From the sequence record NC_006883.2: 64,000 nt of DNA. One strand, written 5' to 3'. Below are positions 22,984 through 57,991 of the stretch, one piece after another. The notes below the pieces were generated by a model, which searched no databases, was not told where the DNA came from, and worked only from the letters and a program-made list of their open reading frames with translations. The translations under genes were made by a program, and so were the position numbers. Position 1 is the first letter of the stretch. Each line of letters opens with the position of its first letter.

Positions 22984-23004
22984 CATCGGTGAGCATTTCC
23001 TCAC

Positions 23005-23070
23005 TTCCCTCTAACCGAGATCACGGGGGTTACATCTCTCATATCCACTAGTGAAGGGATTAGTGGAAAT
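23005..23070 (+). ncRNA. Structured psbA 5' leader, probably the PhotoRC-II RNA motif
   Basis: GAGAT/ATCTC stem; TCCACTA/TAGTGGA hairpin whose loop (AGGGA) can pair with upstream TCCCT; location directly upstream of phage psbA. Confidence 0.55.
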
Positions 23071-23117
23071 AAACGTATCGCTCTACCCTTTGAGCCCTAC
23101 TAAATTTAATTGTCCTC

Positions 23118-56032: not shown

Positions 56033-56623
56033 ATGTCCCAATTACATCCTCTTTTTCCAACTTTTGTATGGGAAACTCATTTGGGGTTAGATAAAGATGC
56101 TTTGGTATCTGCCATTAAAGAATTTAGTGAAGAAAATGAATCTGTTGATTTCACTAATAGAGATGGTGGATATCAGGCACATGGTTTTAATTATCCATTA
56201 TTAACTGATGCTATAAAGAATAATGTACCTACTAATTCTGATTTAGAGGATCTGGGTAAGTTGCATCTTCATACTTGGGTTAATATTAATAATAGTGGAT
56301 CTTATAATGTTAGACATGATCATACAGATGGTATAATTCTTTTATCTGGGTGCTATTATGTCTCTGTACCAGAAAATTCTGGGAATATTAAATTTCATGA
56401 TCCTAGATCTGAGATTATACACTCAATGGCAGATGCTAGATATTATCAATATGATAGAAGTGTTGAGTTAATACCAGAAGACGATTTGATATATTATTTT
56501 CCTTCTTGGTTACAGCACGAAGTAGGATCTAGTAAGAGTGATGATGAAAGAATTTCTATTGCTTTTAATTTGATACGTAAACCTGATGTGGATAGGTATT
56601 GTAATGTGTATAAGTACGAGTGA
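56033..56623 (+). CDS. 2OG-Fe(II) oxygenase (TIGR02466-like)
   Basis: PLFPT, HDHTD..LSGCYY, FPSWLQHEV, RISIAFN. Confidence 0.87.
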   Translation: MSQLHPLFPTFVWETHLGLDKDALVSAIKEFSEENESVDFTNRDGGYQAHGFNYPLLTDAIKNNVPTNSDLEDLGKLHLHTWVNINNSGSYNVRHDHTDGIILLSGCYYVSVPENSGNIKFHDPRSEIIHSMADARYYQYDRSVELIPEDDLIYYFPSWLQHEVGSSKSDDERISIAFNLIRKPDVDRYCNVYKYE

Positions 56624-56753
56624 AACGAAATTCGACTTTTAATTCCAAAATATGCCGACAAAAAATTCGGCAATTTTTTTGCTCTGTAGGGTCGATGTAG
56701 TAAAAAGACATATTGACTTGACTAAATAATTAAAATGTGTTATTATTAACACA

Positions 56754-56802
56754 ATCGTTCAACCTGATACATTCAGGTCGCAAGTAAGCCGACTCGGAAC
56801 GG
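56754..56802 (+). ncRNA. Glutamine riboswitch aptamer 1 (glnA-type motif)
   Basis: ATCGTTC..ACCTGA/TCAGGT stem..CGCAAGT..CCG/CGG..GAACGG; P1 CGTTC/GAACG. Confidence 0.7.
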
Positions 56803-56972
56803 ATCGTTCATCTCATGGACATACTACTCGCTACTATTTTAACTTGTGAAGAGGCAAAGGGGATTATCACTAAGATATCACCTTCGACTCAATATAGAAC
56901 CGAATTGGTTCAAATGGTAAGAGGTAGCACTCAAGGATGTTTATGGGACGCAGAAGTTGACTAAAGGAACGG
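56803..56972 (+). ncRNA. Glutamine riboswitch aptamer 2 with ~130-nt expanded P2 loop
   Basis: ATCGTTCA-TCTC (56803-56814) ... GGGA-CGCAGAAGTTGACTAAAGGAACGG (56945-56972). Confidence 0.6.
56815..56964 (+). CDS. 49-aa ORF nested inside aptamer 2 (not in track)
   Basis: MDILLATILTCEEAKGIITKISPSTQYRTELVQMVRGSTQGCLWDAEVD*. Confidence 0.55.
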   Translation: MDILLATILTCEEAKGIITKISPSTQYRTELVQMVRGSTQGCLWDAEVD

Positions 56973-57003
56973 ATTAAAACCCCTACTACTTTGGAGAAAC
57001 CCA

Positions 57004-57150
57004 ATGGCAAAAGTCACTTATCGTGGTGTCACATACGACACTGAGCATCGTCCTAATCAGGCAACACAACCAACAGAGCATCAAGAATCTTACCGTGGTG
57101 TAAAATTCCTTGTTGATTCTGAAGGACACAAACGTGTTCTTGTTGCTTAA
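57004..57150 (+). CDS. DUF4278-type peptide (related to the GifB/IF17 N-terminal region; not in track)
   Basis: MAKVTYRGVTYD...SYRGVKF, two YRGV motifs; GGAGA RBS. Confidence 0.8.
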   Translation: MAKVTYRGVTYDTEHRPNQATQPTEHQESYRGVKFLVDSEGHKRVLVA

Positions 57151-57175
57151 TTCTAGGAATAGCTAAAAAGAAAGG

Positions 57176-57201
57176 GAAGGGGTTGTACCCCTTCTTTTTT
57201 T
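57176..57201 (+). terminator. Rho-independent terminator
   Basis: GAAGGGG-ttgta-CCCCTTC plus T-run; followed by TATGCTATAAT (-10). Confidence 0.8.
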
Positions 57202-57231
57202 ATGCTATAATATACTCAAAATATATTACTA

Positions 57232-57366
57232 ATGACTAGTAGATCAACAATACTAATTCAAACACTTGAATACTGGATTGGTCAAAAGCATCTTCATACA
57301 GAACAAAAACTTGAAGATATGAAAGCACAGTTGAGAGTAATTAGAGAGGAACTTAATGGACGTTAA
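57232..57366 (+). CDS. 44-aa hypothetical protein (not in track)
   Basis: MTSRSTILIQTLEYWIGQKHLHTEQKLEDMKAQLRVIREELNGR*. Confidence 0.5.
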   Translation: MTSRSTILIQTLEYWIGQKHLHTEQKLEDMKAQLRVIREELNGR

Positions 57367-57991
57367 ATTTGTAAGTATCACTCCTGATGCTGAGAAGATG
57401 ATGGCGTATATCGCTAGGGTATCAAATCCATCAAATCAGCAAAATGAGAATTATTCGGGGTTATTAAAGTATTGTATTAAACATAATCATTGGAGTGTAT
57501 TTGAACAATCCTCAATGACTCTTGAAATCGAGACTACGAGGGGATTAGCGGCCCAGATTTTGAGGCATAGGAGCTTCACATTTCAGGAGTTTTCTCAGAG
57601 ATATGCTGATACAAAACTCTTAGATACTGAGATACCTGTACCAGATCTCCGCAGTCAGGACTTAAAGAATCGTCAGAATAGTAATGATGATATTCCACAG
57701 GAGAAAAAAGAGGAGTATCAGGCACTAATCGCAAGACACTTTGAGGATTCAATGAATCTTTATAATGCTTTACTATCTGAGGGAGTTGCAAAGGAATGTG
57801 CTAGATTTGTGCTTCCACTTGCCACTCCAACCCGTCTGTATATGACTGGTTCGTGCCGTTCTTGGATTCACTACATTAATTTGAGATCTGCACACGGTAC
57901 ACAGAGAGAGCATATGGATGTTGTGGAAAAGGCAAGATCTATCTTTACCGAACAATTTCCTTCGGTTTCCGAAGCCCTTGGATGGGTCTAA
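57356..57991 (+). CDS. thyX: Flavin-dependent thymidylate synthase
   Basis: HWSVFE, QILRHRSFTFQEFSQRY, ECARFVLP, WIHYINLRS. Confidence 0.96.
   Translation: MDVKFVSITPDAEKMMAYIARVSNPSNQQNENYSGLLKYCIKHNHWSVFEQSSMTLEIETTRGLAAQILRHRSFTFQEFSQRYADTKLLDTEIPVPDLRSQDLKNRQNSNDDIPQEKKEEYQALIARHFEDSMNLYNALLSEGVAKECARFVLPLATPTRLYMTGSCRSWIHYINLRSAHGTQREHMDVVEKARSIFTEQFPSVSEALGWV

What the first reader, a model, noticed from the sequence alone, without database searches (positions are those of the whole stretch)
56754..57150. Tandem glutamine riboswitch whose second aptamer contains a whole 49-codon ORF, upstream of a DUF4278 (YRGV) peptide
Seen: aptamer 1 is compact (56754-56802). Aptamer 2 starts at 56803, its P2 5' strand (TCTC) is followed immediately by an ATG (56815), and the ORF runs through about 130 nt of loop and through the aptamer 3' half (GGGACGCAGAAGTTGAC-TAA-AGGAACGG), so its last codons (WDAEVD*) double as riboswitch core. 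Established: glnA-type glutamine aptamers often occur in tandem and control gifB (IF17, glutamine synthetase inactivator), which carries DUF4278. Inference: ribosomes translating the nested ORF would unfold aptamer 2, giving a translation-gated glutamine sensor that lets the phage tune host nitrogen assimilation. I do not know of a description of this nested-ORF design.
Basis: partly seen in the sequence, partly recalled or inferred. Interest (0 to 1): 0.78.

Follow-up and report, generated by a model that had tools for sequence, protein, structure and literature searches.

The report
Glutamine riboswitch split by a gene
In cyanophage P-SSM2 and hundreds of related marine phages, the second of two glutamine-sensing RNA switches is interrupted by a real, conserved small protein gene whose start and stop codons lie inside the switch, so translating that gene and folding the sensor should exclude each other.

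Summary
The window is Prochlorococcus phage P-SSM2. Positions 56718-57201 form one small transcription unit: promoter, compact glutamine aptamer 1 (Rfam 35.1 bits), a second aptamer split by a 49-codon ORF, a DUF4278 (YRGV) peptide gene, and a terminator.

The split design recurs in 128 distinct units from cyanomyophages.
- The ORF starts 4 nt after CGUUCA, at the fifth P2 base pair.
- It ends at the UAA/UGA of the conserved GAC-URA-AGGAACGG core.
- It is open only in this frame, loop lengths differ by multiples of three, and dN/dS is about 0.26.
- P2 closes across the ORF with C-G, U-G and U-A variants. RNAalifold recovers only this long-range P1+P2 fold.

Phage P-TIM68 carries the same aptamer without the ORF, and that copy passes Rfam.

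A new point: the hexamer holding the stop codon pairs with a hexamer overlapping the DUF4278 Shine-Dalgarno. UAA always faces U, UGA faces C or U, and A-C never occurs.

That translation and aptamer folding exclude each other follows from this geometry. The regulatory outcome, and glutamine binding by the split aptamer, are untested.

I found no published description. A 2010 glnA alignment treats this region as flank. I rate it a new variant of a known riboswitch class, of high interest.

The parts
56718..56746 (+). Sigma-70-type promoter: TTGACT, 17-nt spacer, TG-TATTAT. The predicted start is about 56753-56755, the first base of aptamer 1.
   Evidence: 10 of 12 consensus matches with an extended -10. 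The equivalent -10 box is visible upstream of aptamer 1 in related phages.
56754..56805 (+). Compact glutamine aptamer 1: P1 56756-56760 with 56797-56801, and P2 56762-56766 with 56774-56778.
   Evidence: Rfam RF01739 at 35.1 bits, gathering score 35. RF01704 at 26.4 bits, below its gathering score of 33. This P-SSM2 copy is listed in the glnA alignment of Weinberg et al. 2010.
56797..56809 (+). Alternative hairpin GAACG-GAU-CGUUC. It is made of the P1 3' strand of aptamer 1 and the P1 5' strand of aptamer 2, and would exclude both P1 helices.
   Evidence: It appears in the minimum-free-energy fold of the leader at -3.9 kcal/mol. It is inherent to abutting aptamers with identical P1 sequences. 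Its function is inferred only.
56803..56821 (+). 5' half of aptamer 2: P1 5' strand CGUUC 56805-56809, A 56810, and P2 5' strand UCUCAUGGACA 56811-56821, which contains the ATG.
   Evidence: In 126 of 128 units the ATG begins 4 nt after CGUUCA.
56815..56964 (+). Nested ORF of 49 codons. It is an acidic two-helix peptide with two invariant Cys, and belongs to PHROG 504 / T4-like gene cluster 430.
   Evidence: It is open only in this frame in 128 of 128 units. dN/dS is 0.26 overall and 0.35 in the P-SSM2 clade. The AlphaFold2 model has pLDDT 81. The family has 350 clusters at 50% identity.
56938..56972 (+). 3' half of aptamer 2: P2 3' strand 56938-56948, core CGCAGAAGUUGAC 56949-56961, stop TAA 56962-56964, and P1 3' strand GAACG 56967-56971.
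   Evidence: Covariance model R1 scores it 29.2 bits, E = 1.3e-5, over the whole window. The orthologous compact aptamer of P-TIM68 passes Rfam at 35.4 bits.
56961..56994 (+). Helix between CUAAAG (56961-56966, which holds the nested stop codon) and CUUUGG (56989-56994, which overlaps the Shine-Dalgarno).
   Evidence: A 6/6 complementary partner lies 9-11 nt before the DUF4278 ATG in 117 of 122 nested units. UAA faces U in 45 of 45; UGA faces C in 43 and U in 29; A-C never occurs. RNAalifold pair counts are GC 20, GU 15, AU 13. The helix is also present in 83 of 110 compact units.
56993..56996 (+). Shine-Dalgarno GGAG of the DUF4278 gene, 7 nt before its ATG.
   Evidence: Read from the sequence. 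It is conserved as (A)GGAG across the loci.
57004..57150 (+). DUF4278 peptide of 48 aa with two YRGV motifs. It is basic and IF17-like.
   Evidence: Pfam PF14105 at 29 bits, cut-off 25.3. PHROG 5049. The family's median pI is 9.4.
57178..57201 (+). Intrinsic terminator ending the unit.
   Evidence: stem at 57178-57193 followed by a T run. The upstream gene has its own terminator at 56653-56672.

Best explanation
Positions 56718-57201 are a self-contained two-cistron unit with a sigma-70-type promoter, in which glutamine sensing and translation share the same nucleotides.

SHOWN BY SEQUENCE AND COMPARISON
1. Aptamer 1 is an ordinary compact glutamine aptamer.
2. Aptamer 2 is a homologous aptamer. 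Its P2 loop has been replaced by a real protein-coding gene: 49 codons here, 49-66 elsewhere.
3. P1 (CGUUC with GAACG) and P2 close over 116-190 nt.
4. The A of the start codon forms the fifth P2 base pair. In P-SSM2 the whole AUG plus four more bases lie in an 11-bp P2.
5. The last five or six codons (W-D-A-x-x-D) and the stop codon are the aptamer core.
6. The stop-codon hexamer CU(A/G)AAG pairs with a hexamer overlapping the Shine-Dalgarno of the DUF4278 gene.

INFERRED
- While the RNA is being made, the 5' half is single-stranded, so ribosomes can start on the nested ORF.
- Every ribosome on the ORF keeps P2, the core and P1 of aptamer 2 apart. The sensor therefore forms only on ribosome-free RNA.
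- Once the ORF is empty, P2 closes over its own start codon. In P-SSM2 the modelled accessibility falls from 0.40 to 0.004.
- The RNA then works as a glutamine switch for the DUF4278 gene, most likely an ON switch as shown for cellular glutamine-I and -II riboswitches.
- A ribosome terminating at the nested stop must also melt the stop-codon/Shine-Dalgarno helix. Nested-ORF translation can therefore hand over to the DUF4278 gene by translational coupling.
- The net result would be ordered or reciprocal production of an acidic peptide (pI about 4.4) and a basic IF17-like peptide (pI about 9.4), set jointly by glutamine and translation.
- The proposed target, host glutamine synthetase, rests only on the DUF4278 family link.
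For: Identity and context
- P-SSM2 identity; Rfam hit; promoter and terminators; Pfam DUF4278.

The ORF is real
- In 109 of 117 IMG/VR loci the ORF ends in URA followed by GGAACG.
- Among 128 unique units, the ATG offset is 4 nt in 126, and the stop lies 12 or 15 nt after the G of GACGCA in 120. Frames +1 and +2 carry a mean of 4.1 and 5.8 stops and are never open.
- Loop lengths are congruent to 1 mod 3 in all but three units.
- dN/dS is 0.26, with 99.5% of pairs below 1. Differences by codon position are 33%, 16% and 50%.
- The aptamer linker is AG, making an SD-like GGAG, in 99 of 138 nested units against 2 of 104 compact units.

Long-range fold
- P2 pairs 1-4 are 98-100% canonical. Pair 4 is C-G 92, U-A 23, U-G 11. 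Pair 5, which involves the A of AUG, is 84% paired.
- The true 3' window is the best partner of the 5' strand within the ORF in 101 of 128 units.
- Duplex energy with the unit's own partner is -10.9 kcal/mol, against -8.2 with swapped partners.
- RNAalifold on 49 full-length units predicts only long-range P1 and P2 and nothing inside the ORF.
- The P-SSM2 minimum-free-energy fold contains both helices.

Membership by orthology
- The compact second aptamer of P-TIM68, at the same position, scores 35.4 bits in Rfam.
- Model R1 hits the P-SSM2 3' half at E = 1e-5.

Stop-codon / Shine-Dalgarno helix
-. On a tree there are 22 changes of stop type and 24 of the partner base, with no A-C state.

Accessibility model
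-.

ON-switch precedent
- PMC6212724 and PMC6698751.
Against: - No experiment shows that the split aptamer binds glutamine.
- Aptamer 2 lacks the P3 hairpin of glutamine-I. In P-SSM2 the stop UAA puts an A where the Rfam consensus has G (GAAGGAACG).
- P1 is invariant, so it offers no covariation. It appears in the minimum-free-energy fold of only 45 of 128 units.
- Compensatory change in P2 rests on about four independent 3'-side changes. The phylogeny-aware sign tests are underpowered: p = 1 for P2 pair 4 and p = 0.125 for the stop helix.
- Nearest-neighbour modelling predicts no real gain in Shine-Dalgarno accessibility when a ribosome sits on the stop: 0.43 against 0.45.
- The stop-codon/Shine-Dalgarno helix could instead correspond to the ligand-independent P2 of glutamine-II riboswitches rather than a sequestering helix.
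- In most phages, outside the P-SSM2 clade, only the A of the AUG is consistently paired.
- Translation of the ORF has not been observed directly.
Confidence: 0.6

Rival explanations
1. Relic-sensor model. The long-range helix is real, but aptamer 2 no longer senses glutamine. P1 and P2 survive only as a long-distance clamp that hides the nested ORF's start codon once the RNA is complete. Translation is thereby limited to nascent transcripts, or kept going by ribosomes that reopen P2. Aptamer 1 alone senses glutamine.
For: - Aptamer 2 has no P3.
- In P-SSM2 the conserved G of GAAGGAACG is replaced by the stop-codon A.
- P2 is extended to 11 bp at -11.2 kcal/mol, and start-codon accessibility falls from 0.40 to 0.004.
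- Cellular P2-equivalent stems form without ligand (PMC6698751).
Against: - The aptamer core CGCA...GAC-URA-AGGAACGG is kept nearly invariant in 128 units, although it is also coding.
- It is the same sequence as in ORF-free compact second aptamers, one of which passes Rfam.
- A mere clamp would not need the core or P1.
- In most clades P2 is only 5 bp.
Confidence: 0.2
2. No split aptamer. Aptamer 1 simply controls the next gene (the 49-codon ORF). The sequence at 56938-56972 is a separate, local, partial aptamer or leader for the DUF4278 gene. The CGUUCAUC after aptamer 1 is a leftover of a former compact tandem.
For: - Rfam reports nothing for aptamer 2.
- Model R1 can align the 3' half with a local surrogate P1 strand, UGUUU at 56938-56942.
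- P1 never varies.
Against: - The surrogate strand is not conserved outside the P-SSM2 clade.
- The strand next to the ATG covaries with the strand before CGCA across 116-190 nt, and is its best partner in 101 of 128 units.
- RNAalifold finds exactly the long-range P1+P2.
- In the upstream-nested family, all three stop codons covary with the 5' strand of P2.
- A leftover 5' half would not stay invariant in hundreds of phages.
Confidence: 0.1
3. Pure translational-coupling operon. The aptamer halves matter little, and the nested ORF is just the first cistron. Its terminating ribosome opens the helix at the DUF4278 Shine-Dalgarno, so the two peptides are made in fixed proportion whatever the glutamine level at aptamer 2.
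For: - The stop codon lies in the helix that overlaps the Shine-Dalgarno, 29 nt upstream of it.
- That helix is more often intact in nested units (117 of 122) than in compact units (83 of 110), and more often Watson-Crick.
Against: - The same helix exists without any ORF, so it is first a part of the riboswitch.
- Modelling gives almost no change in Shine-Dalgarno accessibility.
- Coupling alone does not explain the conserved P1, P2 and core.
Confidence: 0.1

Closest known systems
Glutamine-I riboswitch (glnA RNA, Rfam RF01739), including tandem arrangements upstream of gifB/DUF4278 genes (Weinberg et al. 2010, PMC2864571; Klahn et al. 2018, PMC6212724)
   Same: - Same conserved P1 (CGUUC/GAACG), P2 position and CGCA...GGAACGG core.
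- Same tandem layout and the same downstream gene family, DUF4278.
- Aptamer 1 of P-SSM2 is already in the published glnA alignment.
   Different: - The P2 loop of the second aptamer, and in many phages of the first too, holds a conserved translated gene.
- The start codon is in P2 and the stop codon is in the core.
- Aptamer 2 has no P3.
Glutamine-II riboswitch (Downstream-peptide motif, RF01704; Huang et al. 2019, PMC6698751)
   Same: - No P3.
- A G follows GAACG.
- After CGCA-N3-GA comes a helix whose loop carries GGAACGG. The stop-codon/Shine-Dalgarno helix could be its counterpart.
- It lies upstream of short YRG peptides and is reported to be an ON switch.
   Different: - RF01704 scores stay below its gathering score here: 26.4 bits for aptamer 1 and no hit for aptamer 2.
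- The loop of the candidate P2-like helix is 20-30 nt, not 9.
- Its 5' strand abuts GAACG directly.
- No ORF is known inside that class.
Leader-peptide attenuators and the Salmonella mgtA leader with mgtL (from my own knowledge, not checked here)
   Same: A short ORF lies within a regulatory leader, and ribosome position decides which RNA structure forms.
   Different: - There the ORF sits in the expression platform, and its peptide is usually not conserved as a protein.
- Here the ORF is inside the ligand-binding aptamer and encodes a peptide under purifying selection (dN/dS 0.26).
Long-distance RNA pairing that limits translation to nascent RNA, as for the phage MS2 maturation gene (from my own knowledge, not checked here)
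   Same: The start codon is sequestered by pairing with a distant segment. This leaves a kinetic window for initiation before the partner is transcribed.
   Different: Here the partner strand is the 3' end of the same ORF and is at the same time a riboswitch helix.
ORFs in peripheral loops of group I/II introns (from my own knowledge)
   Same: A protein gene is lodged in a variable loop of a structured functional RNA, whose core closes around it.
   Different: - Those ORFs encode mobility or maturase proteins and do not overlap the catalytic core.
- Here the codons are shared with the sensor core, and the RNA is a riboswitch.

Membership tests
Glutamine riboswitch, Rfam RF01739 (glnA RNA, glutamine-I) | Score at or above Rfam's gathering threshold (35 bits) | tested here: met
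   Aptamer 1 at 56754-56805 scores 35.1 bits. Aptamer 2 cannot be scored, because it spans 170 nt. Its compact orthologue in P-TIM68 scores 35.4 bits.
Glutamine riboswitch, Rfam RF01739 (glnA RNA, glutamine-I) | P1 helix CGUUC/GAACG closing the aptamer | tested here: met
   In aptamer 2, 56805-56809 pairs with 56967-56971. All 5 pairs are present in 49 of 49 aligned units but never vary, so there is no covariation. P1 is in the minimum-free-energy fold of P-SSM2.
Glutamine riboswitch, Rfam RF01739 (glnA RNA, glutamine-I) | P2 helix of about 5 bp directly after CGUUCA and directly before CGCA, with covariation | tested here: met
   The helix forms over long range. Pairs 1-4 are 98-100% canonical, and pair 4 is C-G 92, U-A 23, U-G 11. 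RNAalifold counts are CG 35, UA 8, UG 4. The tree-aware sign test is underpowered.
Glutamine riboswitch, Rfam RF01739 (glnA RNA, glutamine-I) | P3 hairpin between CGGAAGUA and GAAGGAACG | tested here: not met
   Aptamer 1 has it. Aptamer 2 does not: the segment is 7-13 nt with no possible hairpin, and Infernal skips it as a local end in the compact orthologue. Aptamer 2 is therefore a P3-less variant.
Glutamine riboswitch, Rfam RF01739 (glnA RNA, glutamine-I) | Selective binding of L-glutamine | not testable with these tools
   This needs in-line probing, ITC or a structure.
Glutamine-II riboswitch, Rfam RF01704 | Score at or above the gathering threshold (33 bits); P2 stem whose loop GGAACGG forms the pseudoknot | tested here: inconclusive
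   Aptamer 1 scores 26.4 bits, below 33, and aptamer 2 gives no hit. A covarying helix flanks GAACGG, formed by CU(A/G)AAG and CUU(U/C)AG, but its loop is far larger than in the family.
DUF4278 (Pfam PF14105) / IF17-like peptides | Pfam score above the cut-off, with YRG motifs | tested here: met
   29 bits against a cut-off of 25.3, with two YRGV motifs.
Glutamine synthetase inactivating factor IF17 (gifB) | C-terminal IF7-like region needed to bind glutamine synthetase | tested here: not met
   The peptide has 48 aa, of which residues 3-35 are the DUF4278 match, so it cannot hold the extra region. Klahn et al. note the same lack in Prochlorococcus IF17-like proteins. Action on glutamine synthetase remains a hypothesis.
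Leader-peptide attenuation | The leader ORF acts through ribosome position only, and its peptide sequence is not selected as a protein | tested here: not met
   The nested peptide is under purifying selection (dN/dS 0.26), has invariant Cys11 and Cys42, and gives a confident two-helix model. It may work partly like a leader ORF but is not one.

The most novel reading that the evidence does not exclude
A new regulatory architecture: a ribosome-gated riboswitch.
- One RNA would combine a metabolite signal (glutamine) with its own translation history.
- The nested gene is translated first, from nascent RNA. While it is translated it keeps the sensor apart and couples to the downstream gene.
- When translation lapses, P2 locks the nested start codon and the RNA becomes a glutamine switch for the IF17-like peptide.
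- The acidic nested peptide and the basic DUF4278 peptide would be a functional pair, for example an inhibitor and its antagonist, acting on host nitrogen assimilation during infection.
- The units appear modular and duplicable. Many phages carry two ORF-bearing aptamers in a row, and P-SSM2's closest relatives gain or lose one.
Probability: 0.35. Interest if true: 0.9.

Novelty: new variant of a known kind. Interest (0 to 1): 0.8.

Why it matters
Riboswitch aptamers are regarded as compact non-coding sensors, and phages are thought to use them rarely. A 2017 survey found only two glutamine aptamers in cyanophage genomes (PMC5473149).

Here a conserved protein gene sits inside the ligand-binding domain and shares its start codon, last codons and stop codon with sensor helices. 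The design is present in well over a hundred distinct marine cyanophage contigs.

If it works as proposed, it is a natural example of a sensor whose folding is gated by translation. It gives a compact way to order the synthesis of two peptides according to nitrogen status.

It also shows that model-based scans such as Rfam miss half of these phage riboswitches. And it points to two unstudied small-protein families (PHROG 504 and PHROG 6471) as likely players, with DUF4278 peptides, in phage control of host nitrogen metabolism.

Tried and rejected
1. Rfam with permissive thresholds on 56650-57250 finds only aptamer 1. The split aptamer is out of reach of the model, so this is not evidence against it.

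2. Pfam gives nothing for the nested peptide, and Foldseek against the PDB gives no match with E below 5. Its function stays unknown.

3. A profile search of 1.8 billion representatives returns only small proteins of the same family, with no larger relatives.

4. I considered a local pseudo-aptamer using UGUUU at 56938-42 as its P1 strand, as Infernal aligned it. I rejected it because that strand is not conserved outside the P-SSM2 clade and the construct has no P2.

5. I considered a non-coding, purely structural role for the insert. I rejected it: there is no conserved structure inside the ORF, the whole-leader fold has a z-score of -0.6, and the coding signals are strong.

6. I looked for the design in cellular genomes. 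One scan of 185,579 species genomes gave 9 hits. Four are chance matches in unrelated bacteria. The five real ones lie on contigs filed under cellular genomes; two were checked against phage records and are phage DNA, and the other three look phage-derived but were not checked. The pattern was specific to the phage tandem junction, so single nested aptamers in cells would have been missed.

7. Tree-aware sign tests of covariation were underpowered.

8. Thermodynamic modelling did not support strong occlusion of the DUF4278 Shine-Dalgarno by the 6-bp helix.

9. Ames and Breaker 2011 could not be read. An earlier mention of large P2 inserts there cannot be excluded.

10. The architecture counts are biased by the search pattern, which required an ATG. 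A less biased junction scan suggests nested forms make up about half or more of the second aptamers.
Full report
WHAT THE WINDOW IS
The region is 100% identical to Prochlorococcus phage P-SSM2, a T4-like cyanomyovirus of the genus Salacisavirus. One deposited annotation lists the nested ORF as "predicted protein" and the next ORF as "conserved hypothetical protein". Neighbouring genes are a 2OG-Fe(II) oxygenase (56033-56623) and thyX (57356-57991).

CHECK OF THE OBSERVATION
- Rfam places a glutamine aptamer (RF01739) at 56754-56805 with 35.1 bits, against a gathering score of 35. This is the only riboswitch hit in the window.
- Directly after it come, in order:
  - AUCGUUCA;
  - the strand UCUCAUGGACA (56811-56821), which contains the ATG at 56815;
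  - a 49-codon ORF;
  - UGUUUAUGGGA (56938-56948);
  - CGCAGAAGUUGAC;
  - TAA (56962-56964);
  - AG and GAACG (56967-56971).
- The next ORF (57004-57150) is a DUF4278 peptide: Pfam 29 bits against a cut-off of 25.3, with two YRGV motifs.
- A sigma-70-type promoter, TTGACT-17-TATTAT at 56718-56746, puts the transcript start at the first base of aptamer 1. Terminators lie at 56653-56672 and 57178-57193. The whole is therefore a unit of about 450 nt.
- The minimum-free-energy fold of the leader contains an 11-bp P2 across the ORF, worth -11.2 kcal/mol.
- Rfam cannot see aptamer 2 because of its span.
- A covariance model built from 17 ORF-free second aptamers of other phages finds only two strong hits in the 64-kb window: aptamer 1 (29.4 bits) and the 3' half at 56936-56974 (29.2 bits, E about 1e-5).

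THE SAME DESIGN ELSEWHERE
- Forty-six phage records match the region.
- P-TIM68 has the same cassette with a compact second aptamer, which passes Rfam at 35.4 bits. Its 3' half is nearly identical to that of P-SSM2. This is the ORF-free form of the same element.
- P-SSM7, S-SSM4, S-SSM7, P-RSM6, P-HM1 and P-SSM4 have the ORF-bearing form. There the ORF is annotated as T4-like gene cluster 430, or 541 in P-HM1.
- A scan of IMG/VR for the aptamer junction followed by ATG hit the limit of 120 loci.
- In 109 of 117 of these loci, the ORF that starts at this ATG ends at the UAA/UGA of GAC-URA-AGGAACGG. In most of the rest it ends at a UAG in the P2 3' strand.
- Over 128 distinct units:
  - the ATG lies 4 nt after CGUUCA in 126;
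  - the stop lies 12 or 15 nt after the G of GACGCA in 120;
  - ORFs are 49-66 codons long;
  - the other two frames carry 4.1 and 5.8 stops on average and are never open.
- Loop lengths differ by multiples of three in all but three units.
- A junction scan that did not require an ATG suggests nested forms are about half or more of second aptamers. Compact second aptamers are also common.
- In 185,579 species genomes the junction pattern gave five real hits. Two were checked against phage records and are cyanophage DNA; the other three lie on short or metagenome-binned marine contigs and look phage-derived, but were not checked.

THE ORF IS A GENE
- dN/dS in the ORF interior, with the aptamer-overlapping ends excluded, has a median of 0.26, and 99.5% of pairs are below 1. 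Differences fall 33%, 16% and 50% on codon positions 1, 2 and 3. Within the P-SSM2 clade dN/dS is 0.35.
- The peptide family is PHROG 504.
- It has invariant Cys11 and Cys42 and nearly invariant Glu30.
- It gives a two-helix model with pLDDT 81, with no fold match in the PDB.
- It has 350 clusters at 50% identity, all small proteins.
- It is acidic, with a median pI of 4.4. The DUF4278 peptides are basic, at 9.4.
- The linker between the aptamers is AG in 99 of 138 nested units but in only 2 of 104 compact units. AG creates an SD-like GGAG 10 nt before the ATG. This is an independent sign that the ORF is translated. P-SSM2 itself has AU at this position.

THE APTAMER CLOSES AROUND THE GENE
- P2 pairs 1-4 are 98-100% canonical. 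Pair 4 is C-G in 92 units, U-A in 23 and U-G in 11. Pair 5 is the A of the AUG with U, at 84%.
- The strand after CGUUCA finds its best partner within the whole ORF at the window just before CGCA in 101 of 128 units.
- Duplex energy with the unit's own partner is -10.9 kcal/mol, against -8.2 for partners swapped among sequences.
- RNAalifold, run without guidance on 49 diverse full-length units, predicts exactly the long-range P1 (5 invariant pairs) and P2 (CG 35, UA 8, UG 4 at pair 4), and nothing conserved inside the ORF.
- Caveats:
  - P1 never varies.
  - On a tree built from other positions, the pair-4 type changes 14 times, but the 3' base changes only about 4 times. The sign test therefore has no power.

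A SECOND NESTED FAMILY
- In P-SSM4, in P-HM1 and in 36 distinct IMG/VR units, the first aptamer is also split, by a 65-68-codon ORF (PHROG 6471, gene cluster 429).
- There the start and stop codons lie on opposite strands of P2, and the stop type follows the 5' strand: UCCUAUG with CAUAGGA, UCUUAUG with UAUAAGA, and UCUCAUG with CAUGAGA.
- Two single-cell phage contigs, 98% and 94% identical to P-SSM2 here, carry this ORF in aptamer 1, where P-SSM2 is compact. Loop ORFs are therefore gained or lost between close relatives.
- The two peptide families are weakly similar: hhalign probability 58%, with both Cys aligned.

THE STOP CODON IS PART OF A HELIX AT THE NEXT GENE'S RIBOSOME SITE
- The hexamer CU(A/G)AAG holds the stop codon and abuts GAACG. 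It has a fully complementary hexamer ending 9-11 nt before the DUF4278 ATG in 117 of 122 nested units.
- That partner overlaps the A and G of AGGAG.
- UAA faces U in 45 of 45 units. UGA faces C in 43 and U in 29. A-C never occurs. The uncorrected Fisher test gives p = 8e-13.
- RNAalifold reports the helix with GC 20, GU 15, AU 13 and none broken at that pair.
- On the tree the stop type changes 22 times and the partner base 24 times. Where both differ they agree (4 against 0), which is too few for significance, p = 0.125.
- In P-SSM2 the helix is 56961-56966 with 56989-56994, at -2.9 kcal/mol.
- The helix also exists in 83 of 110 compact second aptamers. It is therefore a riboswitch feature that the ORF's stop codon has come to occupy.
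- Two readings of this helix remain open:
  - It may be a sequestering helix that competes with the conserved GAAG/E-loop and P1. Cellular glutamine switches are reported to be ON switches in which ligand binding is thought to release an occluded ribosome site (PMC6212724; PMC6698751).
  - It may be the counterpart of the ligand-independent P2 of glutamine-II.
- Nearest-neighbour modelling does not predict strong Shine-Dalgarno occlusion: 0.43 unpaired, and 0.45 with a ribosome placed on the stop.

HOW IT MOST LIKELY WORKS
- Shown: the nucleotides are shared between the gene and the sensor, as described above.
- Inferred:
  - A ribosome on the ORF must separate P2, the core and P1, so aptamer 2 can exist only on untranslated RNA.
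  - Before the 3' half is transcribed, the start region is open. Once the RNA is complete it is less open. Modelled unpaired probability falls from 0.45 to 0.26 on average, and from 0.40 to 0.004 in P-SSM2. It returns to 0.44 when a ribosome covers the P2 3' strand.
  - A terminating ribosome must melt the helix at the DUF4278 Shine-Dalgarno.
- I therefore favour a translation-gated switch with hand-over to the downstream gene.
  - My confidence in the anatomy is about 0.9.
  - My confidence in this mechanism as stated is about 0.5-0.6.
- The main rivals are that aptamer 2 is a relic clamp that no longer binds glutamine, and that the cassette is a plain coupled operon.
- The link to host glutamine synthetase rests only on DUF4278 being part of IF17. 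The 48-aa peptide cannot hold the C-terminal region of IF17 that binds the enzyme.

COMPARISON WITH WHAT IS KNOWN
- Glutamine aptamers, their tandem use, their link to DUF4278 genes and their presence in T4-like cyanophages are all published.
- Aptamer 1 of P-SSM2 is itself in the 2010 glnA alignment. In that alignment everything from the second CGUUCA onward is flank.
- A 2017 survey counted only two glutamine aptamers in cyanophage genomes and concluded that phages rarely use riboswitches.
- Full-text searches found no account of an ORF inside a glutamine aptamer.
- Ames and Breaker 2011 could not be read.
- I classify the finding as a new variant of a known kind.

VERDICT
The mechanism is plausible, rests on the geometry and is untested. 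Interest: 0.8.

Noticed in passing
L014:402-602 (P-SSM4), L013:409-612 (P-HM1), L003 and L005 about 648-880, and 36 distinct IMG/VR units: The first aptamer of the tandem can also be split, by a 65-68-codon ORF (PHROG 6471, T4-like gene cluster 429). Its start and stop codons sit on opposite strands of P2, and all three stop codons covary with the 5' strand. Phage contigs 94-98% identical to P-SSM2 carry it where P-SSM2 has a compact aptamer 1. The family is weakly similar to PHROG 504 (hhalign probability 58%).
   Followed up: partly
window 22991-23080 (+): PhotoRC-II RNA (Rfam RF01717) at 48.9 bits, above its gathering score of 39. This is a cyanophage motif described upstream of psbA.
   Followed up: no
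L012:1039-1224, L006:1010-1207, L004:1008-1207, L014:117-302: manA RNA (RF01745, 164-188 bits) lies next to the glutamine-aptamer/DUF4278 cassette in several phages. In P-SSM4 the annotated ORF PSSM4_169.1 (L014:172-345) overlaps this RNA and may be a false gene call.
   Followed up: no
L141 (Nonlabens xiamenensis 1Q3 NODE_6), L137 (Synechococcus MAG CUG2217 NODE_33), L142 and L143 (Euryarchaeota MAG TMED129), L138: Contigs filed under cellular genomes carry this cassette. L141 is 98% identical to cyanophage P-TIM40, and L137 carries T4-like Synechococcus phage genes, so both are phage DNA. L138, L142 and L143 look phage-derived but were not checked.
   Followed up: partly
IMG/VR loci L266, L270, L274, L281 and others; also L264, L268, L275, L284 and others: There is a further nested subfamily with the ATG only 3 nt after CGUUCA (CGUUCAUCU-AUGGAA, loops of 138-144 nt). 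There is also a frequent junction type, CGUUCAUUCGCUAUUCGCAAA, that my parser could not assign to a compact or nested aptamer.
   Followed up: no
Between aptamer 2 and the Shine-Dalgarno in many loci (e.g. L009, L018, L023); window 56971-56984 is the weak P-SSM2 equivalent: A small hairpin starts at the G residues after GAACG (GGGGC-NAAAA-UCCC and variants such as GGAUC...GAUCC and GGGUU...AACCU) and seems to covary. Some loci carry an extra inserted hairpin there. Its relation to the switch is unknown.
   Followed up: no
window 56797-56809: The P1 3' strand of aptamer 1 and the P1 5' strand of aptamer 2 form a perfect hairpin, GAACG-GAU-CGUUC, at -3.9 kcal/mol. It would exclude both P1 helices and lies 6-18 nt before the nested ATG. 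It could link the state of aptamer 1 to initiation on the nested ORF.
   Followed up: partly
window 57232-57366 (+): A 44-codon ORF lies between the terminator and thyX and overlaps the thyX start by 11 nt. It is annotated as a conserved hypothetical protein in one P-SSM2 record and has no Pfam match.
   Followed up: no
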